A stretch of 64,000 nucleotides of DNA, from positions 288,755-352,754 of IMG/VR virus record IMGVR_UViG_3300023184_000024. One strand, written 5' to 3'. This document shows, one piece after another, positions 26,855 through 36,751 of this stretch. The notes under the pieces were generated by a model that was not told the DNA's origin, made no database searches, and saw nothing but the letters and a program-made list of their open reading frames with translations. The translations under genes and the position numbers were made by a program. Numbering within the stretch: position 1 is the first letter of the stretch; every line of letters begins with the position of its first letter.

Positions 26855-29800
26855 ATGTCTACAGGGCCTTATAGTCCGTTAATGTTGATTGCCTCCAGTG
26901 GCTTTTTAAACAATCAAGCATTGATAGCCAACACCACTCTATCCAATGCCATTGGTGCATTTAATTCAACCACCGTGGTCGGAATGTTTAATGGTGTGGT
27001 TGCCAATGCTTTTGCAGCCGGTAATAGTATTGCTAACTCAACTAGACTAAGTTTACAAACCATGGGTGCAAATACTTTGCCGGCAGTTACAAATTCTGTG
27101 CCAGGCGAGCAGTTTGGAACATTTACTTCAGTACTTGGAGAATCGTACACAACTGGATTTTCAGGACTGGCATTGTCACAGGCACAAACTTATCTTGGCA
27201 ACGGAGACCTTGGCAAGTTTGCACAAATTTATAATACCTGTGACGGTTATAGGCAAATTACAAATCAATCGCTGACATCAACCAACAACAGTAATATATT
27301 AAATTCAACATTCATAAACATGGATGCGTTGAGTACAGGCAGCATTAGTTTAGTATCAAACAATTTTTCCAAGTTTGGCAGCGATCTTTCCAAGCTTGGA
27401 AAACTAGTGAATTTTTCATTGTTGGATTACCTAGGATATCCATGGGCACTGCTATATCAAATAATCAAAGTATCGGGCCTTACATCCACACTAAAAGCAA
27501 TATTAAACGACAATGGAGTGAGTACCACAGTATTAACACAATTGAAAAGGGGACCAACCCCGGTCAGTGGATCAATAGATAAAAAAATATACTCAGCCAT
27601 GAAAAAGGTCACCGGAACTGAATTGGCACAGGTGAAATTGTTGCTGGGTGTCACAGTGTCCGATGGTATAGTAACCTTGGCAGATTTATTAAATCCCACA
27701 AAGATATTGCCCAATAGTTATCAATCGTTGTTGGTGTCGTTGCCAACCCCGGCAACACCAACAGCCCCATCAACCACTGCCAACTTGGTTTCTTGGTCTG
27801 GAACATCCGACAGTTGGAGTAAATCTTCTACATTGACCACACAAGATGTCAATTGGGGACTGTACCGAAGCTGGTTTGGAGAAAATCCAAACACAAACTG
27901 GGGATCAAATGGAACAGTGACCGCGCTGTCGGGCACAGTCAGTGTGGCTGCCAGTGGAAAAAATGTAGACGTTGTTATTGTAGATGCAGTGGTCGATCCC
28001 AATCATCCAGAGTTTGCACTTCGTCCGGACGGATCGGGCGGAACACGGGTAAAATATTTCAACTGGTATTCATTGAATCTAGCCGGAGACCCCGCCGCCG
28101 GCAGTACATACAATCCTCCAATTACTACAACAGCACCAAATTCTGCCGATGACAGTCGTCATGCAACACATGTGGCAGGCACAGTGGCAGGTAACACACA
28201 AGGGTGGGCTCCTAATGCCAATATCTACAACATCAGCCCACAGTATGTAACTGGCGGAGTGCAATATGCTTATTTGTACAAGTATATTCTTGCATGGCAT
28301 TTGCAAAAAAAGGCAGCTGGCAATACAACTCCAACAATATGCAACAACAGTTGGTATTCACGCTACACAATACCTTACACTAGTATTACTCAATTGATCT
28401 ATCGTGGAGTCACGTACACAGGACCTTTTACTATTCCTCAATTGGCCACATATGGCATCAATGTTAACAGCTCAGGTAATGCATTAATTGGGCTACGCAA
28501 TGCGGCCATGGATGCTGATATACAGGCCTGTATCAATGCTGGAGTTGTCATGGTCGGCTGTGCTGGCAACGATGACATTAAAATCGCCGCCGACTCCACA
28601 GACGTAGATTACAACAATACAATAACTGCAACTGGATACAACAGCGGCAACCCAATATATTTTAATCGTGGTTCTTCTCCGGGATCTGCATCCAATGTTA
28701 TTTGTGTGGGTGCAATACGGTCGGCAGCAAATAATCCTCCAGGATCAGACGCCAAAGCAAATTTCAGCAGTTGCGGCCCGCGAGTTGACTTGTATGCACC
28801 TGGATCGTATATCACCAGTAGTTGGTTGACTAGCTCACCGCCCAGCGGAGGTGGATATCCTAACCCGGTGCAGGATCCTAGAAACTCCAGTTATTATCGA
28901 GCAAAGGACAGTGGAACTAGTATGGCTGCTCCTCAGGTCACCGGCGTGTTGGCCTGTGCGTTAGAAGCGTCACCGACTTTGACTCACAATGCGGCTCGAG
29001 AACTTATAATATCAAATGCTAAAATAAATCAAATTCCAGACACTGCTGGAGGCCCGACTGATCCTTATAGTTTGCAAGGTTCGCCCAATCGGTATCTTAC
29101 ATTAATAACCACACTGTATGTTAATTCTACCAGCACTGCTGGATCAACCAGCATAGCCATCTATAATTCAACTGGGACCGTGACCAGCAGTGCCTCAACA
29201 TTGATTGTTAACAATTTAAATTATATTAATTTGAAAAAAATATTGCCAGCAGACCAAGCAGCCGGTAATGAATTATGGTCTCAAAGTCTGCGACAAATTA
29301 AAAACATTTTGTCGATCAAGTTGCAAGACTTGGCCGTGGCAATCAGTGGATTGGAAACCAATGCCGGTCTTGACTCAATAAATGCGTTGACCAGCCCCGT
29401 TCCTGATAGTGTAAAACAAACAATTGAATCCAATCTAATTGGTGGGTCTGGTGACAACGGCCTAGTCACGCTGTATGATTTGCTGGGTACTGCCGCAGGA
29501 TACGTTGTACCTGGCCAATTCAGTGCTGCCGCCAACACACTAAATGCAATGCAAACAGCCAATTCTTTGTACACATTGACCAATAGCACCAGTGGAGTTT
29601 ACACAGTTATGAATAACTGTTTTGCCGGCGACTATGATGACCCAATGTCTCCTGGTGGTATTCTTATTCCTGGTAGCCTGCCCGGTGCAGGAACATATGG
29701 CAACATTGACCTTGCATTTTCTACCGGACTAATACCTGCAGGTGAGAATTTAATTTTTACAATATCAACAACCTACTCGGCCAACACTGTTAGCTTAAAC

Positions 29801-30097
29801 ACAAACTTTGTCAACATAGGCAACCAATTACAAATTGAAGCATTGAATCAAACTGCCGCACAACTTGACTACACTGTGTTGTTGGCCAATTCAAAACAGT
29901 CTGCAATGAGCATTGCCAGCGATCTTCATAATATAGGAGTCCAGATTGAACCAATGGGTCCTGCTGAATTTTTCACAGCCGTGGCCAATCTTGCTGATTT
30001 GTCTGGGCAAGCGGTGATAGGAAGTATGCGAGAAGGCCGAAATCTAGAGCTGTTAAATTCTGTGGGCATTAAATCGGACACACAGCTAGCGGCTTGA
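26855..30097 (+). CDS. Large virion-associated protein with internal S8 subtilisin-like peptidase domain
   Basis: IVD (Asp), HATHVAGTVAG (His), AGN (oxyanion Asn), SGTSMAAPQV (Ser); follows PAAR. Confidence 0.8.
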   Translation: MSTGPYSPLMLIASSGFLNNQALIANTTLSNAIGAFNSTTVVGMFNGVVANAFAAGNSIANSTRLSLQTMGANTLPAVTNSVPGEQFGTFTSVLGESYTTGFSGLALSQAQTYLGNGDLGKFAQIYNTCDGYRQITNQSLTSTNNSNILNSTFINMDALSTGSISLVSNNFSKFGSDLSKLGKLVNFSLLDYLGYPWALLYQIIKVSGLTSTLKAILNDNGVSTTVLTQLKRGPTPVSGSIDKKIYSAMKKVTGTELAQVKLLLGVTVSDGIVTLADLLNPTKILPNSYQSLLVSLPTPATPTAPSTTANLVSWSGTSDSWSKSSTLTTQDVNWGLYRSWFGENPNTNWGSNGTVTALSGTVSVAASGKNVDVVIVDAVVDPNHPEFALRPDGSGGTRVKYFNWYSLNLAGDPAAGSTYNPPITTTAPNSADDSRHATHVAGTVAGNTQGWAPNANIYNISPQYVTGGVQYAYLYKYILAWHLQKKAAGNTTPTICNNSWYSRYTIPYTSITQLIYRGVTYTGPFTIPQLATYGINVNSSGNALIGLRNAAMDADIQACINAGVVMVGCAGNDDIKIAADSTDVDYNNTITATGYNSGNPIYFNRGSSPGSASNVICVGAIRSAANNPPGSDAKANFSSCGPRVDLYAPGSYITSSWLTSSPPSGGGYPNPVQDPRNSSYYRAKDSGTSMAAPQVTGVLACALEASPTLTHNAARELIISNAKINQIPDTAGGPTDPYSLQGSPNRYLTLITTLYVNSTSTAGSTSIAIYNSTGTVTSSASTLIVNNLNYINLKKILPADQAAGNELWSQSLRQIKNILSIKLQDLAVAISGLETNAGLDSINALTSPVPDSVKQTIESNLIGGSGDNGLVTLYDLLGTAAGYVVPGQFSAAANTLNAMQTANSLYTLTNSTSGVYTVMNNCFAGDYDDPMSPGGILIPGSLPGAGTYGNIDLAFSTGLIPAGENLIFTISTTYSANTVSLNTNFVNIGNQLQIEALNQTAAQLDYTVLLANSKQSAMSIASDLHNIGVQIEPMGPAEFFTAVANLADLSGQAVIGSMREGRNLELLNSVGIKSDTQLAA

Positions 30098-30183: not shown

Positions 30184-31089
30184 ATGAAAAAAATCTTATT
30201 GGCTGCATTACTGGGCCTCACATCATTGGCAAATGCCCAAGGTATTCAAACCTACGGCAACCTCACAACCTTCACTGAAAGGTCTACCAATGGAACAGCA
30301 ACAACTACGCAGATGACAAATGATCAGTCTCGTATCGGGTTCCGCGGAGTGGAAAAAGTTGGAAACGCTGATGCATTTTTCAAATTAGAAACATCAATTA
30401 TCAGCGATGATCCACGAGCCAAGACAACATCTCTAGGCGACCGCGCCGCTGTGGTTGGTCTAAGAAACAAACTCGGCAGTATCGGTCTTGGTCGCGATGT
30501 TCACGCTTATGGATTCTATCAATCAGTGTACTCTCCAATGGGAGTGAATTATGGCATGGAGCACGAGACTGTGCGCGAAGGCCATGGTGGTCCACGTTTC
30601 GGCAATGCACACTTCATTGCTGTGACACCGATGCCAGGTGTTTCTATTAGATATGACAGAAGTCTAGATGAAACAGGAAAACTAGGTGCAACAACCAGCA
30701 TGTGGGCCGATGCAAAATTAGGCATGCTCAGAGTTGGATACACTGAACATTCATCTCCAGTCACTGGTGATACCAAAGCACTTGGTGTAATAGCCACAGT
30801 ATCGAAAAATTTAGAATTGATTGGACTAACAGTGCAAGATAGAAAGCCAACCAACAAAGGCGACAGCTATACAGTTGGTGCAAAAGTTGCCCTGGCACCA
30901 CAGTGGGATGCCGCTGTTGGCATGGGTGAGTTTGATCGTACCACTGATCATGGTAAATTTTACAATGCCAAACTGACCTACAAGTTTAGCAACCGTACCA
31001 ATGCGCAACTGGCAATTTTTGATGCTAGTTCAAACGTCAAAAGCTTTGAGCGTAAGCAAGTTGGTTTGGGCCTAAGTCACGCCTTCTAA
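30184..31089 (+). CDS. Gram-negative porin (betaproteobacterial type)
   Basis: Signal peptide, SRIGFRGVE..AFFKLE, RAAVVGL..G.I.LGR, YKFSNRT, C-terminal GLSHAF. Confidence 0.85.
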   Translation: MKKILLAALLGLTSLANAQGIQTYGNLTTFTERSTNGTATTTQMTNDQSRIGFRGVEKVGNADAFFKLETSIISDDPRAKTTSLGDRAAVVGLRNKLGSIGLGRDVHAYGFYQSVYSPMGVNYGMEHETVREGHGGPRFGNAHFIAVTPMPGVSIRYDRSLDETGKLGATTSMWADAKLGMLRVGYTEHSSPVTGDTKALGVIATVSKNLELIGLTVQDRKPTNKGDSYTVGAKVALAPQWDAAVGMGEFDRTTDHGKFYNAKLTYKFSNRTNAQLAIFDASSNVKSFERKQVGLGLSHAF

Positions 31090-31109
31090 ACTGCTTAATT
31101 TTTAAGCAC

Positions 31110-31141
31110 AAAAACCCTACGTAATGTAGGGTTTTTCTTTT
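31110..31141 (+). terminator. Rho-independent terminator
   Basis: AAAAACCCTAC-gtaat-GTAGGGTTTTT-CTTTT. Confidence 0.85.
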
Positions 31142-31179
31142 GTTGCTTAAAAACAACACCAAATTTTTCAGCATTTTTT

Positions 31180-31232
31180 GGTTGACCGAATATTCCCAAT
31201 TTGCTATAATACTTGTATAGTAATTAAAAAGG
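31180..31232 (+). promoter_or_regulatory. Early promoter cassette, copy 1
   Basis: GGTTGACC-N17-TATAAT, then AAGGAG. Confidence 0.85.
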
Positions 31233-31240
31233 AGTGAGAG

Positions 31241-31516
31241 ATGAAGGCACTTAACACCTGGATTGATCAGCAAAATCGTTGGGCTAGTTTGTTCAAAGGT
31301 CAACGCACTGCACCTTTGTATGAAATTCAAACTGCCGAAGGCAGAAAACGTGTGGCCGAAGCCATTGACTGTGCTCTGAGCCCGGAGAATTTGAGTTGTG
31401 ATGGCGAACTTCCTATGAGCCAAGTCCGTGCTCGCTATCGTTCGCTCACATCAGCCGCCCAAGATCTAGTAAAATTAGACCCCAGCATGGCTCAATTCAT
31501 GTACGAATTTGGTTGA
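31241..31516 (+). CDS. Early hypothetical protein
   Basis: Promoter and SD; LSPENLSCDGE motif. Confidence 0.75.
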   Translation: MKALNTWIDQQNRWASLFKGQRTAPLYEIQTAEGRKRVAEAIDCALSPENLSCDGELPMSQVRARYRSLTSAAQDLVKLDPSMAQFMYEFG

Positions 31517-31563
31517 CCAATAAATTGTCTTTTGCTATAATACTTGTATAGTAATTAAAAAGG
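31511..31563 (+). promoter_or_regulatory. Early promoter cassette, copy 2
   Basis: GGTTGACC-N17-TATAAT; 31531-31563 is identical to 31200-31232 (33 nt). Confidence 0.85.
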
Positions 31564-31573
31564 GGTAAAAACT

Positions 31574-31858
31574 ATGAACGGTTGGGAAAATAGTAGAGGG
31601 TATCTTACGACAATGAAGGCGGAGGCTCACGACCGCAATCCAAATCTCAGCCGTCGTAATGCCAACCCCAAGGTCAAGCTACAGTTTGACCCCGAGGACG
31701 ATATTGGATGTTTTCATTGTGGCACTTTCCGCAGTTATAATTTTGAATTTGACAGCAATTATTGTGACCCTTGTAACAAGTGGTTGGAAGGTCTTTGCAA
31801 GGATGCTGACTGTCCCTTCTGCCCCAAGCGTCCCAAGTACCCAAAATATCCCGGTTGA
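31574..31858 (+). CDS. Early Cys-rich hypothetical protein
   Basis: CFHC, CDPC and C..CPFC motifs. Confidence 0.6.
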   Translation: MNGWENSRGYLTTMKAEAHDRNPNLSRRNANPKVKLQFDPEDDIGCFHCGTFRSYNFEFDSNYCDPCNKWLEGLCKDADCPFCPKRPKYPKYPG

Positions 31859-31883
31859 CCGATAATTACCGATTTGCTATAAT
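31853..31883 (+). promoter_or_regulatory. Early promoter cassette, copy 3
   Basis: GGTTGACC-N17-TATAAT with the TTTGC extension. Confidence 0.85.
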
Positions 31884-31914
31884 ATACATATACTGAAACA
31901 CAAAGGAGCTCAAA

Positions 31915-32388
31915 ATGGGTACACGTTCAAGAATTGGTGTCATGCATGGCAACAAGTGCAAGTCTGTTTACTGCCATTGGGATGGCTATCTTGAGCACAA
32001 TGGTGCCATCCTGCAGGAGCACTATGACAGTGCCAAAGCCAACAACCTGGTAGCACTTGGCGACATGAGTTCATTGCGTCCCGAGATTGGTGAGCAACAT
32101 GCCTTTAGCTACCACGATCTGCCCAAAGACGAAGTTGAAGCATTCAAAGCCACAACAGAAAACATGTGCACCTTTTACGGCCGTGACCGCGGTGAGACCG
32201 GCACTGAGTTCAAAGTGGCACACAATTTCTCAGAGTTTCTTGAACAGGTTGAACATTGTGGTGGCGAGTACTACTATGTTATGGAAGATGGCCTATGGTA
32301 CTGTGGCAGTATCTATGGTGCGTTCAAAGGCCAACTAGTACTGTTGAGCCAAGCATTGGATTCCGTTAAACAAGCCGAGGAAGCCTAA
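31915..32388 (+). CDS. Early hypothetical protein
   Basis: AAGGAG SD; MGTRSRIG..YCHWDGY. Confidence 0.75.
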   Translation: MGTRSRIGVMHGNKCKSVYCHWDGYLEHNGAILQEHYDSAKANNLVALGDMSSLRPEIGEQHAFSYHDLPKDEVEAFKATTENMCTFYGRDRGETGTEFKVAHNFSEFLEQVEHCGGEYYYVMEDGLWYCGSIYGAFKGQLVLLSQALDSVKQAEEA

Positions 32389-32389
32389 G

Positions 32390-32599
32390 ATGGCTTATGC
32401 AGTTTTCAAGCATAACAAAGAATATGGTCCACGCAAGGGACTTGAAGGACCATTTCATTATCCCAACGGACAGGTGTTGTACTACGATCCCAAGGCCGGT
32501 GAGTATTATGACCCTACCACTGATTTTTATGTACCTCACGAAGACGTTGCAGAACTGCAACAACTGGTCTTTAATATGTTAGCAAAGGGTGCACAGTGA
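32390..32599 (+). CDS. Hypothetical protein
   Basis: 69-aa ORF in the early operon (LEGPF..YYDPK.GEYYDP). Confidence 0.7.
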   Translation: MAYAVFKHNKEYGPRKGLEGPFHYPNGQVLYYDPKAGEYYDPTTDFYVPHEDVAELQQLVFNMLAKGAQ

Positions 32600-32880
32600 A
32601 CAATGGGATTTGTCCAGACTGTAATGGAACATGTCGATTGCCAGCCGGCGACACACGATATAAAAGTGTGATCTCGGGCTACGATCACAAAACTGACACT
32701 TTGCCTTGTTCTAATTGCGGCGGTCAGTACATGTTTGGGCGACCCACAGGTAAAGTAAAACTCAATGCCGCCGGTGATCCTTGTAAACATATATACACAT
32801 CTAAGAATGTTGGTAGGTGCTTGACTGAATATGTGTGTCAACACTGCAATGACCGATATCAAATTGATTCAGGCGACTAA
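32596..32880 (+). CDS. Zn-ribbon hypothetical protein
   Basis: CPDCNG, CSNCGG, CQHC. Confidence 0.65.
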   Translation: MNNGICPDCNGTCRLPAGDTRYKSVISGYDHKTDTLPCSNCGGQYMFGRPTGKVKLNAAGDPCKHIYTSKNVGRCLTEYVCQHCNDRYQIDSGD

Positions 32881-32900: not shown

Positions 32901-34274
32901 ATGAATGAAACAAATTTTTCCGACCCAAGGTTTACCGGGGTAATGGCAGCAGGTTGGATCCGCGACCTCGAAAGCTCAGATAGTCGCATACACAAAGAAA
33001 AAACCATTGAAAAAGCCTTGATGGCGGCCAAGCTGGGCAGTGCCGATGCGCAGGCTTTCTTGTTCAACTGCTATCAAGCCTACAATCCTTTTTATGTGTT
33101 TGGCGTTCGACAAGTGCCAGAAACCCAAGAGTTAACTGACCGCCCAAATCATTGGCCTTCATTTTGGGCCTTGTTAGAAAATCTACGCACTCGTAGTGTC
33201 ACTGGTAATCGTGCAAGAGAGGCAATTGAAACTTGCAGTCAGTTGTTTGACAGTGAAGAGTGGAATGGACTTGCTCGGCGTGTGTTGATCAAGGACTTGA
33301 GATGCGGCATCACAGATAAAACACTCAACAAAGTGCTGGGCAAAACTGAATATAAGATTCCTGTGTTTAGTTGCCAACTTGCGCAGGACTCCACAGATCA
33401 ACCCAAGAAGCTCAAGGGTATCAAACGACTAGAAGTCAAATTGGACGGTGTTCGTGTGTTGGCAGTTATGAATGGATCTGCTTGTACATTGTACAGCCGC
33501 AATGGCAAAGAGTTTGAAAACTTCCCGCAGATTGCAGACTTCATTGAAGAACATCGCAAAGCATTTCAACGCAATGCCGCTTTTGGTGGACAGTTTGTGT
33601 TGGATGGCGAGATTGTGGGCAAGAGCTTCCAGGACCTGATGAAACAAGCACAGCGTAAGAGCAATGCCAAAACAGACAACATGGTTTATCATGTGTTTGA
33701 CATATTGCCGCTGACGGAGTTCCGTGATGGTTTTTGCAATCTACAGCAACACAATCGCATTGACTTGTTGAAACGTGCTCAAGCATTCTTGCCCGAAAAC
33801 AGTTGTGTGCAAGTCATGCCTGGTATGGATGTGGACCTGGACACTGCAGAAGGCCATGACATTATGCGCCGTTTTGCCGAAGCCAGTGTAGAAGAAGGTT
33901 ACGAGGGCATCATGATCAAAAGCATGGATGCACCCTACGAGTGCAAACGCAGTGACTTTTGGATGAAATGGAAACCCACAATCACAGTGGATTTAAATAT
34001 TGTGGGTTTTGAAGAAGGCACTGGTCGCAATGCTGGCCGCTTGGGTGCTATAATATGTGAAGGAATTGATAATGAACGCAATATTCGTGTTAATGTTGGC
34101 ACAGGTTTTAGTGATGGGGATCGTGATAGCTATTGGGCCGAAAAAGACAGCCTGTTTGGCAACGTGGTCGAAGTGCAAGCTGATGCAGTTACGCAAAATC
34201 AAGACGGATCATACAGTTTGAGATTTCCTAGGTTTGTGAGATTCCGCGGATTCGGTCCAGGAGAGAAACTATAG
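32901..34274 (+). CDS. ATP-dependent DNA ligase
   Basis: KLDGVR, LDGEI, VFDIL, EGIMIK, MKWK, SLRFPRF. Confidence 0.95.
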   Translation: MNETNFSDPRFTGVMAAGWIRDLESSDSRIHKEKTIEKALMAAKLGSADAQAFLFNCYQAYNPFYVFGVRQVPETQELTDRPNHWPSFWALLENLRTRSVTGNRAREAIETCSQLFDSEEWNGLARRVLIKDLRCGITDKTLNKVLGKTEYKIPVFSCQLAQDSTDQPKKLKGIKRLEVKLDGVRVLAVMNGSACTLYSRNGKEFENFPQIADFIEEHRKAFQRNAAFGGQFVLDGEIVGKSFQDLMKQAQRKSNAKTDNMVYHVFDILPLTEFRDGFCNLQQHNRIDLLKRAQAFLPENSCVQVMPGMDVDLDTAEGHDIMRRFAEASVEEGYEGIMIKSMDAPYECKRSDFWMKWKPTITVDLNIVGFEEGTGRNAGRLGAIICEGIDNERNIRVNVGTGFSDGDRDSYWAEKDSLFGNVVEVQADAVTQNQDGSYSLRFPRFVRFRGFGPGEKL

Positions 34275-34292
34275 CATGGAATTAATTTAACG

Positions 34293-35168
34293 TTGAAGCT
34301 ACAGGATATTAAATGGTTGCACATTGAACCCAGCACCAAGTGTAATGCTTGGTGCCCTGCCTGTGGCCGCAACCAAAATGGCTACGGCCTTGCACCGGAC
34401 CTGGTAGAACAAGACCTAGACATTACTTGGTTAGAAACAGTGCTAGAATCCCTGCCGGGTCGGCTTGATGGCATCCAGTTTTGCGGAGTTCTTGGAGATC
34501 CATGTGCACACACCAAGTTTTTAAACCTAGTAAAGTTGGCTAAAAAATACACCAATAAAATACAAATACACACCAACGGCGGCCTAAGATCACAACAATG
34601 GTGGTCCGAGTTGGCACACCTGTTGTCTGATGTAGATCACGATGTATGGTTCGGCATCGACGGCATCAACGAAGTGCACGAAATATACCGACAAGGAACC
34701 AGTTACGGCAAAGTAATTGGCAACGCCACTGAATTTATCAAACATGGTGGCCATGCAACCTGGCAATTTATACCGTATCAACACAACGAACATCAGATAA
34801 AGGAGTGCATGAAAACCAGCCAACAACTTGGATTTAAGAAATTTAAACTCATTCGTGGATTTAGAGATCTAAAAACTCAGGCTCGGCATTGGCAAACTGG
34901 TGACGTGTTTCAATTGGAACAAGCCAAGATGTATTCCCAGGTCAATATTATTTCTCACAAGCAGGTGGTTAAAAAAGAAAATTGCATGCATTTGTCTGGC
35001 CCCAGCGCATACATTTCCGCAGATAAAAAAATTAGCCCTTGTTGTTATTTTTATCAAACTAGATCCTATGATACAATCACTGAAATGTTGGGGAGTCTCA
35101 ACATTGAGCAGGAGTTATTGTCGCCTGTTAGGACTTGCCTAAGATCCTGTGGAACAACTGCACAGTGA
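34293..35168 (+). CDS. Radical SAM protein with C-terminal Cys cluster
   Basis: CNAWCPAC, HTNG, C..PCC..CxxxC. Confidence 0.85.
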   Translation: MKLQDIKWLHIEPSTKCNAWCPACGRNQNGYGLAPDLVEQDLDITWLETVLESLPGRLDGIQFCGVLGDPCAHTKFLNLVKLAKKYTNKIQIHTNGGLRSQQWWSELAHLLSDVDHDVWFGIDGINEVHEIYRQGTSYGKVIGNATEFIKHGGHATWQFIPYQHNEHQIKECMKTSQQLGFKKFKLIRGFRDLKTQARHWQTGDVFQLEQAKMYSQVNIISHKQVVKKENCMHLSGPSAYISADKKISPCCYFYQTRSYDTITEMLGSLNIEQELLSPVRTCLRSCGTTAQ

Positions 35169-35200
35169 TTCGACAACATTTACCCACTAAATAATAAATC

Positions 35201-36751
35201 ATGATTTTAACTATATTAATGTTTGTTGTGGCTTTGTGCTTGAGTGGTGTGGCCGCATTTTATTCTATTGTAGGGCTTACTGCTATTTTTGCCGCCGCAG
35301 TTACGCCTATTATTTTAATGGGCAGTATTTTAGAAGTGGCCAAGCTCACAGTCACAGTTTGGTTGCACGACTACTGGCATCGTATTCGCTGGTTAATGAA
35401 GGTGTATTTGTGCTCAGCAGTGGTTGTATTGATGATAATCACCAGCATGGGCATATTTGGATTTTTGTCAAAAGCGCACAGCGACCAAGGCATGGTGTCG
35501 GGTGATGTACTTGCCAAGATCAGTGTATATGATGAAAAAATTAAAATCTCAAAGGAAAATATAGATGCAAATCGCCGGGCACTTAAACAAATGGATGAAG
35601 CTGTGGACCAAGTTATGGGCCGAAGCACAGATGAAAAAGGTGCAGATAAAGCTGTACAAATCCGCAGGACCCAACAGAAGGAACGTGCTAGACTCCTTGC
35701 CGAAATTGAAGCCGAACAGAAAAAAATTACAGCACTTAATGAAGAACGAGCCCCTATTGCTGCCGAGGTACGCAAGGTTGAGGCAGAAGTCGGTCCGATA
35801 AAATACATTGCCGCATTGATTTACGGTGATGATCCAGATGCCAATTTACTAGAACGTGCAGTACGTTGGGTGATTATACTATTGGTGGTGGTGTTTGATC
35901 CTTTGGCAGTGATGATGTTGCTGGCCGCAACTGAAAGTAGAAAATGGTTGCGCGAAGATAAACTCAAGTACCCTCCTGATGACGGTCCTTTAACTGAAGA
36001 ACAAATCGAACAAATCAAGGAATCTGCCAAAGAAGACTTGCCCACTAGTGAGCTGGTAACCAAAGATGAGCTATTCCCAGTGGACCCTTCCCCACCAGGG
36101 TGGATGTACAACACCACTACAACAACATATCCTTCTACCGAAGAAGAAGTTGAAGAGTTGACACAAGAGTTTGATCGTAGCAAACACGCATACTTAGACA
36201 AGCCGTTTGTGCATTTTGAAAACCTCACGCCTATGGTGGCAAAAAAACAACCTGAAATCACTGCGGAGGAAGTCAGCATTGCTGTATCTACTCCAGAAAA
36301 GGATGAGGATGAGGATGGTGACAACGACAGTGACGTGGTAAAAATGGCCAAGACATTGTGGAAACAAGCAAACCCAACTAGCACTCTTAAAGATCAACGA
36401 AGACTATTACAATTCAAAGCAATAGATCATCTTCCTTGGTATGACTACATTGAACAAGCTGAGAATGAAGTTATTATACCGTTTGGTGACCGCTTACCCG
36501 ACACCGGTGAGAAAGCTAGCAAAAAAGGCAATCAATATATACACACGGGATATTTGCCCACTAAGTTATTCAAATACAATGGATCTAAATGGATTGAGGT
36601 TGACAAAAACCTCACAGACCGTTATGCTTACAATGATGCCTACATAGATTTTTTAATAAAAAAAGTTGGCACAGGTGAATATGACCCCGAGCTATTAAAT
36701 GATAGCGAACGAACTCAACTAGAACTTAAACTTAAAAGAGAAATTATTTAA
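35201..36751 (+). CDS. Membrane protein with coiled-coil and acidic domains
   Basis: Three N-terminal TM segments, a long heptad region, a fourth TM, and an acidic linker. Confidence 0.65.

What the first reader, a model, noticed from the sequence alone, without database searches (positions are those of the whole stretch)
31092..31915. Tandem early-promoter cassettes whose -35 box supplies the stop codon of the preceding gene
Seen: three GGTTGACC-N17-TATAAT promoters, each with TTTGC before the -10. Copies 1 and 2 share 33 identical nt through the SD. Both intervening genes end in GGT-TGA (Gly-stop at 31511-31516 and 31853-31858), which is the start of the next promoter. A terminator and palindromes (TGCTTAA-ttt-TTAAGCA at 31092-31108) precede copy 1. 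Known: repeated early-promoter elements promote gene shuffling in some T4-like phages. Inference: an integron-like array in which recombination between promoter repeats adds or removes small host-takeover genes.
Basis: partly seen in the sequence, partly recalled or inferred. Interest (0 to 1): 0.6.

Follow-up and report, generated by a model that had tools for sequence, protein, structure and literature searches.

The report
Promoter-bounded gene cassettes in jumbo phage
Three near-perfect bacterial-type promoters in a row, each driving one small gene of unknown function in a 353-kb freshwater phage, belong to a genome-wide repeat family at which related phages have gained, lost and moved single genes, much like the 'PeSL' cassettes known from T4-like phages.

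Summary
Three GGTTGACC-N17-TATAAT elements sit at window 31180, 31511 and 31853 (0 expected by chance). Copies 1 and 2 share 33 identical nt. Genes 31241-31516 and 31574-31858 both end GGT-TGA inside the next -35 box. A terminator precedes copy 1.

The window is the end of a complete 352,754-bp uncultivated jumbo phage. It has T4-type capsid and portal genes and a UvsX-like recombinase; its nearest cultured kin are PA5oct-like phages. The genome holds 21 copies of the ~60-nt cassette (-35, TG-extended -10, conserved leader, SD), all on one strand, in about six arrays, in front of unrelated ORFan genes.

In 80 related loci and five complete relatives, the stretch between tail fibre and ligase holds 1-8 such promoters and more than 30 gene families in changing order. 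Indels are exactly one promoter-to-promoter unit and lie inside exact repeats of up to 42 nt. Single-copy genes, gene A included, sit in different arrays in different genomes.

Using the -35 TGA as a stop is recurrent: 28 of 42 independent ORFs that reach the box, against 1/3 expected.

This is PeSL-type homologous shuffling, not an integron; no integrase was found. Excision circles, promoter activity and a host-takeover role remain untested.

The parts
30184..31089 (+). Phage-encoded porin gene (301 aa, signal peptide). It is itself a variable cassette upstream of the array.
   Evidence: Pfam Porin_4, E 1.8e-15. The family occurs in only 12 of the related loci.
31092..31108 (+). Palindrome TGCTTAA-ttt-TTAAGCA directly after the porin stop codon
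   Evidence: Read. It is part of a nested inverted repeat 31099-31114 / 31138-31153.
31110..31146 (+). Intrinsic terminator (12-bp stem, 3-nt loop, T-run) that closes the porin transcript
   Evidence: Terminator hairpins abutting the -35 are typical of first-in-array cassettes in relatives.
31141..31158 (+). Small stem-loop TGTTG-N8-CAACA. This motif precedes about 11 of the 21 cassettes of this genome.
31177..31240 (+). Promoter cassette copy 1: GG flank 31180-81, -35 TTGACC 31182-87, TG 31202-03, -10 TATAAT 31205-10, conserved leader, SD GGAG 31231-34
31241..31516 (+). Gene A, 91 aa, ORFan (family 16). Its stop is the TGA of the -35 of copy 2.
   Evidence: It is single copy but sits in other arrays in G003, G004 and G005, always promoter-flanked.
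31508..31573 (+). Promoter cassette copy 2 (compact, no stem-loop): -35 31513-18, -10 31536-41. It shares 33 nt (31531-31563) with copy 1.
31574..31858 (+). Gene B, 94 aa, Cys-rich zinc-ribbon-like ORFan (family 28). Its stop is the TGA of the -35 of copy 3.
   Evidence: It is 87-91 % nt identical to L015-L019, although flanking genes are 69-81 %.
31850..31914 (+). Promoter cassette copy 3 (compact, divergent leader): -35 31855-60, -10 31878-83, SD about 31901-07
31915..32388 (+). Gene C, 157 aa, widespread phage protein of unknown function (phrog_1987; family 13)
   Evidence: In relatives it follows four different left neighbours. In G005 it lies directly after gene A plus a promoter.
32390..32880 (+). 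Two further small genes (69 aa and 94 aa) without a promoter of their own, then the conserved DNA ligase at 32901-34274

Best explanation
The three elements are copies of a clade-wide regulatory cassette of about 60 nt. It consists of a GG flank, a -35 TTGACC, a conserved 17-nt spacer ending in the TG of an extended -10, TATAAT(A), a conserved short A/T-rich leader and a strong Shine-Dalgarno about 7 nt before the ATG.

Function (inferred): the cassettes are read by the host sigma-70 RNA polymerase, so each small gene gets its own strong promoter and ribosome site. No terminator lies between copies 1-3, so transcription adds up along the array.

Two forms (shown): a 'full' form follows a terminator or stem-loop, as copy 1 does. 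A 'compact' form abuts the preceding gene so tightly that the TGA inside GG-TTGACC ends that gene, as in copies 2 and 3.

Shuffling: because the same 30-60 nt recur in front of unrelated genes in about six arrays per genome, they act as portable homology. Comparison shows that related genomes differ by whole promoter-to-promoter units, with junctions inside the repeat, and that single genes sit in different arrays.

Recombination route (inferred): homologous recombination between copies deletes, inserts, replaces and relocates single-gene units. The phage has a UvsX-like recombinase. Excised circles re-inserting at another copy is the PeSL model.

The stop in the -35 box is best read as a selected compaction solution. 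It is the only reading frame in which a gene can touch the promoter without overlapping it.
For: Promoter signature:
- The three copies are 11/12 matches to consensus with a 17-nt spacer and the TG.
- The genome has 16 exact and 21 PWM copies, all on the + strand and none on the - strand, each 50-60 nt before an ATG.
- Five complete relatives have 10-18 exact copies each, again on one strand.
- The nearest cultured kin by capsid protein (68-72 % aa) include PA5oct. PA5oct depends on host RNAP and has TTGAC/TATAATA motifs at mapped transcript starts (PMC7318152).

Portable homology:
- The downstream genes are not paralogues.

Shuffling:
- 80 related loci have 1-8 promoters and more than 30 gene families between tail fibre and ligase, with changing neighbours.
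- L014 and L009 differ by a 454-nt gene-plus-promoter unit bounded by a 42-nt exact repeat.
- L026 and L030 differ by a 521-nt unit bounded by a 29-nt repeat. Other junctions lie in the -35/spacer or the SD.
- HSP ends of the window against relatives fall at 31172-82, 31508-13, 31560-66, 31573-77 and 31853.
- All-against-all, 17.5 % of HSP ends lie in promoter intervals that cover 5.7 % of the sequence.

Inter-array movement:
- Families 15, 18, 3, 7, 14, 22, 37, 41 and 55 lie upstream of the ligase in relatives but in the 1-3 kb and 115-118 kb arrays here.
- Family 37 and gene A are single copy yet in different arrays in different genomes. Gene A keeps a promoter on both sides and its 321-331-nt period.

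Robustness: the same arrangements recur in contigs from independent metagenomes.

Stop in -35: 5 of 21 in this genome. Across 139 independent contexts, 28 of the 42 ORFs that reach the box stop there, against 1/3 expected, p about 1e-5.

Recombinase: a UvsX-like gene at genome 273023-274084.

Precedent: PeSLs.
Against: - No transcript data. Promoter activity, start site and early timing are inferred from sequence and from relatives.
- No direct evidence of ongoing recombination. Only Logan contigs were available. Their joints at the promoters have short sides and 88-95 % likeness, so they most likely come from co-occurring relatives.
- Promoter copies within a locus are no more alike than copies between loci (0.43 against 0.42). 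There is thus no sign of frequent gene conversion.
- The relatives are 66-84 % identical at nucleotide level, so most events are old and their junctions cannot be placed more finely than 'within the cassette'.
- Most HSP ends (82 %) are not at promoters.
- All genomes are metagenome assemblies, so individual chimeric joins at repeats cannot be excluded.
Confidence: 0.8

Rival explanations
1. Passive promoters. Each small gene simply needs its own strong promoter. Gene content changes by illegitimate recombination or transfer unrelated to the repeats, and the promoters travel as passengers.
For: Only 17.5 % of homology ends lie in promoter intervals. There is no within-locus homogenisation of promoter copies. 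Some variable genes lack a promoter of their own, for example 32390-32880.
Against: Where close pairs exist, the indel is exactly one promoter period. Its junction lies inside an exact repeat of 29-42 nt shared by the two flanking promoters. Promoter intervals are enriched three-fold for homology ends. Relocated genes keep a promoter at both ends.
Confidence: 0.12
2. Assembly artefact. Metagenome assemblers mis-join co-occurring related phages at the repeated promoters, which creates apparent shuffling.
For: The cassette is a high-copy repeat in the lake metagenomes, and k=31 contigs break at every copy. All genomes compared are metagenome-assembled.
Against: The exact repeats are at most about 42 nt, shorter than reads and than the large k-mers of standard assemblers. 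Identical arrangements recur in contigs from independent samples, for example L009/L010, L016/L018/L019, L020/L021/L074 and L022/L023/L024. Contigs with 0 differences bridge promoter 1 through gene A to promoter 2, and promoter 2 into gene B (records 2 and 11).
Confidence: 0.04
3. Dedicated site-specific system. A phage recombinase or nuclease recognises the conserved spacer or leader as an attachment site, making a true integron analogue.
For: The spacer (..aAttCCCA.ttTGc) and leader are conserved across a clade whose genes are only 66-84 % identical. That is more than sigma-70 contacts require.
Against: There is no tyrosine recombinase in the genome. Junctions lie at different places in the cassette: the 42-nt -10-to-ATG region, the -35/spacer and the SD. 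A UvsX-type general recombinase is present.
Confidence: 0.04

Closest known systems
PeSL (promoter-early stem-loop) cassettes of T4-type phages (phi1/RB49: Arbiol et al. 2010, PMC2839356; PST, nt-1/KVP40: Comeau et al. 2014, PMC4122927)
   Same: Repeated sigma-70-consensus promoter modules end in an SD and start codon. They are concentrated in hyperplastic regions in front of ORFans. Indels and replacements between related genomes are bounded by the modules, and homologous recombination is the proposed mechanism. The host phage has T4-type core genes. First-in-array copies are fused to a terminator hairpin upstream of the -35.
   Different: This is a different, uncultivated lineage of 340-365 kb, PA5oct-like by capsid, with a different cassette sequence. 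Internal 'compact' copies (2 and 3 here) have no stem-loop. In PeSLs the upstream stop codon lies in the AT-rich region before the -35. Here it is often the TGA of the -35 itself. Spacer and leader are conserved too. Mini-circles and promoter/terminator activity were shown for PeSLs but not here.
Conserved TTGAC / TATAATA promoters of Pseudomonas jumbo phage PA5oct (Lood et al. 2020, PMC7318152)
   Same: It is among the nearest cultured relatives by major capsid protein (68 % aa). It depends on host RNA polymerase and has 32 promoters with the same two boxes, including the A after TATAAT, at RNA-seq transcript starts.
   Different: That paper did not report cassette arrays, recombination at the promoters or stop codons in the -35, as far as the passages read here show. 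No DNA similarity to the cassette was found in GenBank phages.
Integrons
   Same: An array of single-gene cassettes whose content differs between relatives.
   Different: There is no IntI-type tyrosine recombinase and no attI/attC. Every cassette carries its own promoter instead of depending on one Pc. Junction positions vary, as in homologous exchange.
Host-takeover module of Bacillus phage SPO1 (own knowledge: many small early genes, each with strong sigma-A promoters and strong ribosome sites)
   Same: A dense series of strong host-type promoters sits in front of small early genes.
   Different: It is not known as a recombination substrate and belongs to a different phage lineage. The comparison rests on memory and was not tested here.

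Membership tests
PeSL-type regulatory cassette | Repeated motif identical or near-identical to the sigma-70 promoter consensus | tested here: met
   TTGACC-17-TATAAT with TG, an 11/12 match, three times in the window and 21 times in the genome, one strand only
PeSL-type regulatory cassette | Stem-loop (terminator/attenuator) as part of the motif: copy 1 and other first-in-array copies | tested here: met
   Terminator at 31110-31136 and stem-loop at 31141-31158 before copy 1. In 49 % of intergenic contexts across the clade the 60 nt upstream fold with z <= -2, often as a terminator abutting the -35.
PeSL-type regulatory cassette | Stem-loop as part of the motif: copies 2 and 3 (compact form) | tested here: not met
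   Folding of -30..+70 gives z = -0.44 and +0.81 with no hairpin beyond chance. Only 11 % of stop-in-(-35) contexts reach z <= -2.
PeSL-type regulatory cassette | Shine-Dalgarno and start codon of the downstream gene at the 3' end | tested here: met
   GGAG or GGGG lies 6-9 nt before the ATG in all three copies and in most genome copies
PeSL-type regulatory cassette | Preferential location in variable (hyperplastic) regions in front of ORFans | tested here: met
   About six clusters per genome. Cassette genes have no Pfam, PHROG-function or PADLOC match. The region between tail fibre and ligase is hypervariable.
PeSL-type regulatory cassette | Insertions, deletions and replacements between related genomes are bounded by the motifs | tested here: met
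PeSL-type regulatory cassette | Excised mini-circles with a chimeric motif | not testable with these tools
   Only assembled contigs of the runs were available. 'Goes back' joints (31512>31176, 31233>31180) have 35-36-nt sides and cannot be told from other arrays.
PeSL-type regulatory cassette | Measured promoter and terminator activity | not testable with these tools
   No RNA run holds the stretch
Integron | IntI-type tyrosine recombinase next to the array | tested here: not met
   PF00589 finds nothing in the complete genome, while all 14 control genomes match
Integron | Promoterless cassettes with attC sites expressed from one common promoter | tested here: not met
   Each cassette has its own promoter. 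The only repeat family in the array is the promoter itself.

The most novel reading that the evidence does not exclude
The cassettes may be more than passive homology. The strongly conserved spacer and leader could be recognised by a phage-encoded factor, a regulator or a nuclease/recombination mediator, that both times early expression and promotes excision of promoter-to-promoter units as circles. These circles would re-insert at any other copy, in the same or a co-infecting genome. That would be a recombinase-independent, self-expressing 'integron of phages' operating across a whole lineage of freshwater jumbo phages. The in-frame -35 stop codon would then define the cassette boundary.
Probability: 0.15. 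Interest if true: 0.75.

Novelty: new variant of a known kind. Interest (0 to 1): 0.5.

Why it matters
It extends promoter-mediated modular shuffling beyond the cultured T4-like phages where it was described. The new case is an abundant, uncultivated lineage of 340-365-kb freshwater phages, with hundreds of natural 'experiments' available for comparison (412 related loci).

It gives a concrete rule for how such giant genomes gain and move ORFan genes without breaking expression: one promoter period at a time, also between distant arrays.

It also marks which genes are the fast-turnover accessory set and therefore candidates for host-interaction functions. The recurrent use of the -35 TGA as a stop codon is a neat example of dual coding under compaction.

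The 59-nt cassette is a ready-made strong expression signal to test.

Tried and rejected
- Near-identical or distant DNA relatives in GenBank phages: none for the 6-kb region. The 68-nt cassette gave only a chance 35-nt hit in Lactobacillus phages.
- Paralogy of the downstream genes as the cause of the repeat: rejected, no blastp similarity.
- Concerted evolution of promoter copies within a genome: no signal, 0.43 against 0.42 ungapped identity. Not claimed.
- A Fisher test of 'variable adjacency against promoter present' was uninformative. Nearly every adjacency counted as variable with my crude ORF families.
- Global MAFFT alignments of diverged pairs gave meaningless gap placements, for example those involving family 10 and L025 against L009. 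Only close pairs were used.
- Reads: all runs are kept as contigs. Depth spikes, contig breaks and joints at the promoters show a high-copy repeat and co-occurring variants. They do not show deletions or circles within one genome.
- The narrow stem-loop motif GTTG-N4-14-CAAC is common in this genome but is found in only 10 of 215 cassettes across the clade. A general folding test replaced it.
- Rfam: nothing near a gathering score in 30900-32100.
- Function of genes A, B and C and of other array genes: no Pfam or PADLOC family, PHROGs of unknown function only, Atlas neighbours unnamed.
- Integron reading: no tyrosine recombinase.
- The 'moraphage' lineage paper (PMC12619734) describes a different group, up to 307 kb with Bacteroidota hosts.
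Full report
**What is in the sequence.**
- The pattern GGTTGACC-N16-18-TATAAT occurs exactly three times in the window, at 31180, 31511 and 31853. All are on the + strand with a 17-nt spacer, and shuffles gave none.
- A consensus scan scores each copy 11 of 12, with a TG before the -10.
- Copies 1 and 2 share a 33-nt identical run, 31200-31232 = 31531-31563. Copy 3 shares only 12-13 nt.
- As a 59-nt repeat the copies are 100/83/64 % alike, spaced 331 and 342 nt.
- ORF 31241-31516 (91 aa) and ORF 31574-31858 (94 aa) end GGT TGA on the first bases of the next promoter.
- Upstream of copy 1 lie the palindrome 31092-31108, a good intrinsic terminator at 31110-31136 and a small stem-loop at 31141-31158.

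**Where it lies.**
- The window is bases 288755-352754 of a 352,754-bp IMG/VR virus record rated complete.
- The genome has a Gp23-family capsid gene (E 1e-99), a T4-type portal (E 1e-104) and a UvsX-like recombinase.
- Its capsid protein is 68-72 % identical to those of Sinorhizobium phage Phosso, a 349-kb Vibrio phage and the Pseudomonas PA5oct group.
- No GenBank phage is close at DNA level. The ligase's best hits there are about 34 % identical.
- Runs that hold the stretch are lake and freshwater metagenomes.
- Locally the array follows a tail-fibre gene with a subtilase domain and a phage-encoded porin. It precedes an ATP-dependent DNA ligase and a radical-SAM gene.

**A genome-wide cassette family.**
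- The exact pattern occurs 16 times in the genome. A weight matrix finds 21 copies. All are on the + strand and none on the - strand.
- They form clusters at about 1.3-2.5, 10-15, 114.7-118, 124-127, 283.7-284.3 and 319.9-320.6 kb.
- Conservation extends over the GG flank, the spacer, the A after TATAAT, a leader of roughly 20 nt and the SD.
- The genes behind them are unrelated to each other and have no known function. The Atlas gives only unnamed viral clusters for gene C and zinc-ribbon-like small proteins for gene B.
- Five complete relatives of 342-364 kb carry 10-18 exact copies each, again on one strand and in clusters.
- Over 215 non-identical cassettes the consensus keeps the boxes, the TG and parts of the spacer and leader.

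**Are they promoters?** This is inferred, not shown. The arguments are:
- the near-perfect sigma-70 signature with extended -10;
- the fixed distance to an SD and ATG;
- the strict co-orientation with the genes;
- the terminators placed just before first-in-array copies;
- the evidence from PA5oct, which depends on host RNA polymerase and has TTGAC and TATAATA motifs at RNA-seq transcript starts.

No RNA run holds the stretch, and Rfam finds nothing for the leader.

**Gene content between the promoters is not invariant.**
- The ligase has 412 relatives in IMG/VR. I fetched 80 loci at 74-93 % aa identity.
- Upstream of the ligase they carry from 1 to 8 promoters at very different spacings.
- After clustering ORFs, the stretch between the conserved tail-fibre gene and the ligase block holds more than 30 gene families, mostly one per promoter slot, with changing neighbours.
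- Gene A (family 16) is followed by gene B, by family 20 or by family 3.
- Gene C (family 13) follows gene B, family 37 or family 23, or comes directly after the tail fibre.
- The porin is itself present in only 12 loci.
- The same arrangement recurs in contigs from independent metagenomes, which argues against random assembly chimeras.

**Breakpoints map to the repeats.**
- L014 and L009 are about 93-95 % identical in the flanks and differ by a 454-nt segment, one gene plus one promoter. In L009 the two flanking promoters share a 42-nt exact repeat from the -10 region to the ATG. L014 has one hybrid promoter.
- L026 and L030 differ by 521 nt bounded by a 29-nt repeat. L020 and L030 differ by 157 nt with the junction in the -35/spacer. 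L043 and L041 differ by 195 nt with the junction at the SD.
- For the window itself, blastn against all loci gives homology blocks that start at 31172-31182, 31508-31513, 31573-31577 or 31853. They end at 31560-31566 or 31884-31921, which are the edges of the three cassettes.
- All-against-all, 17.5 % of the ends of HSPs of at least 150 nt fall in promoter intervals that cover 5.7 % of the sequence. Left ends pile up at the -35 and right ends at the SD/ATG. The ends are not independent, so the p-value is only indicative.
- Gene B is 87-91 % identical at nucleotide level to L015-L019, where the ligase is 81 % and other flanks are 69-77 %. This hints at a separate history.

**Cassettes move between arrays.**
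- Families that lie upstream of the ligase in relatives are found here in the arrays at 1-3 kb (15, 18, 3, 7, 14), at 14 kb (2) and at 115-118 kb (22, 37, 41, 55).
- Family 37 is single copy. It lies 1.2 kb upstream of the ligase in G001 and G002, at 117.5 kb in this genome, and is absent from G003-G005.
- Gene A is single copy in all five complete relatives. It lies 34-40 kb from the ligase in G003, G004 and G005.
- In those genomes its neighbours are homologues of this genome's 115-118 kb or 13-15 kb array genes. It has a promoter on both sides, its stop again in the -35 TGA, and a period of 321-331 nt.
- In G005 gene A is followed, through one promoter, directly by gene C, without gene B.
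- Relocation of single units without loss of the 30-kb block between arrays is what excision and re-insertion at another copy would give. That route is inference.

**The stop codon in the -35 box.**
- In this genome 5 of 21 cassettes end the preceding gene at the -35 TGA.
- Over 139 context clusters in this genome and the relatives: 72 are intergenic, 28 stop at the -35 TGA, 8 stop one or two codons earlier, and 14 read on into the promoter or leader.
- Of ORFs that reach the box, 28 of 42 use its TGA, against one third expected (p about 1e-5).
- All 13 family-16 genes end GGT TGA. In L015 gene B ends GAT TGA where the promoter flank is GA, so the last residue follows the promoter flank.
- It is the only frame in which a gene can abut the promoter without running 12-20 codons through it. 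I read it as selected compaction, recurrent but not universal.

**Two forms and the PeSL comparison.**
- PeSLs, as described for phi1/RB49 and later PST and nt-1, are about 100-nt composites. They comprise an AT-rich region, a sigma-70 consensus promoter, a stem-loop terminator at variable position and an SD/start.
- They are concentrated before ORFans in hyperplastic regions. Recombination between them explains indels and yields mini-circles.
- Here, first-in-array cassettes are fused to hairpins. 49 % of intergenic contexts fold with z <= -2, many as terminators whose T-run abuts the GG. Eleven copies in this genome are preceded by a TGTTGT...ACAACA stem-loop.
- Compact internal copies such as 2 and 3 have none.
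- The system therefore works like PeSLs. It differs in lineage, in sequence, in the stem-loop-less compact form and in the stop-in-(-35) arrangement.
- It is not an integron. There is no tyrosine recombinase, every cassette has its own promoter, and crossover points vary.

**What the reads add.**
- Only Logan contigs were available.
- Summed contig depth rises from about 35 to 1183, 384 and 168-245 over the three promoters in the best run. Contigs break at each copy.
- Contigs with no differences bridge promoter 1 through gene A to promoter 2, and promoter 2 into gene B.
- Joints fuse a copy-1-like leader to gene B (a 3554-nt contig about 90 % alike) or to gene C (another study).
- These show a high-copy repeat and co-occurring variants. 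They are not proof of excision in this genome.

**Verdict.**
- Promoter function, timing, live recombination and gene function remain to be shown.
- In the papers I could search, PeSL-type shuffling has not been described for this lineage. That is not proof of absence.

Noticed in passing
window 30184-31089: A phage-encoded Gram-negative porin (Pfam Porin_4, E 1.8e-15, with signal peptide) lies between the tail-fibre gene and the promoter array. It is present in only 12 of the related loci, where it has its own promoter, so it is itself a mobile accessory cassette.
   Followed up: partly
window 26855-30097: A 1080-aa tail-fibre-like protein with a subtilase (Peptidase_S8) domain. In relatives it is mosaic and often split into 2-3 ORFs, and many homology breaks lie inside it.
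   Followed up: partly
G000 genome 1319, 12976, 115015, 115407, 123275, 126801, 131980, 284014, 319895 (= window 31141): A conserved small stem-loop, TGTTGT-(A/T-rich loop)-ACAACA, lies 6-23 nt upstream of many promoter cassettes of this genome. It is rare in the relatives' ligase arrays (10 of 215 cassettes). Its role (attenuator or protein site) is unknown.
   Followed up: partly
window 31167-31247, 31491-31571, 31815-31976: In lake metagenome contigs the summed depth over the promoter cassettes is 5- to 30-fold above the flanks. The cassette is therefore a very abundant repeat in these communities.
   Followed up: partly
window 34272-35252 and relatives L009, L016: The region just downstream of the ligase also varies in content. 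The radical-SAM gene at 34293-35168 is absent from some relatives, and others carry about 2.8 kb there. No GGTTGACC-type promoter was seen in this stretch of the window.
   Followed up: no
G000 genome 273023-274084: The UvsX-like recombinase match is split, with one in-frame TGA between the two matched parts. This could be a frameshift, two genes or an assembly error.
   Followed up: no
window 32596-32880 and 31574-31858: Two small Cys-rich proteins with CxxC pairs. One has DnaJ-type CxxCxG motifs and one is zinc-ribbon-like. Both are among the variable genes.
   Followed up: no
window 31573-31884 against L016-L019: Gene B is 91 % identical at nucleotide level to relatives whose neighbouring genes are only 69-81 % identical. 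This suggests a more recent exchange of this one cassette.
   Followed up: partly
G000 genome ends: The 127-bp 'direct terminal repeat' of the record is an exact prefix/suffix overlap. It is most simply the wrap-around of a circular assembly rather than a physical terminal repeat.
   Followed up: no
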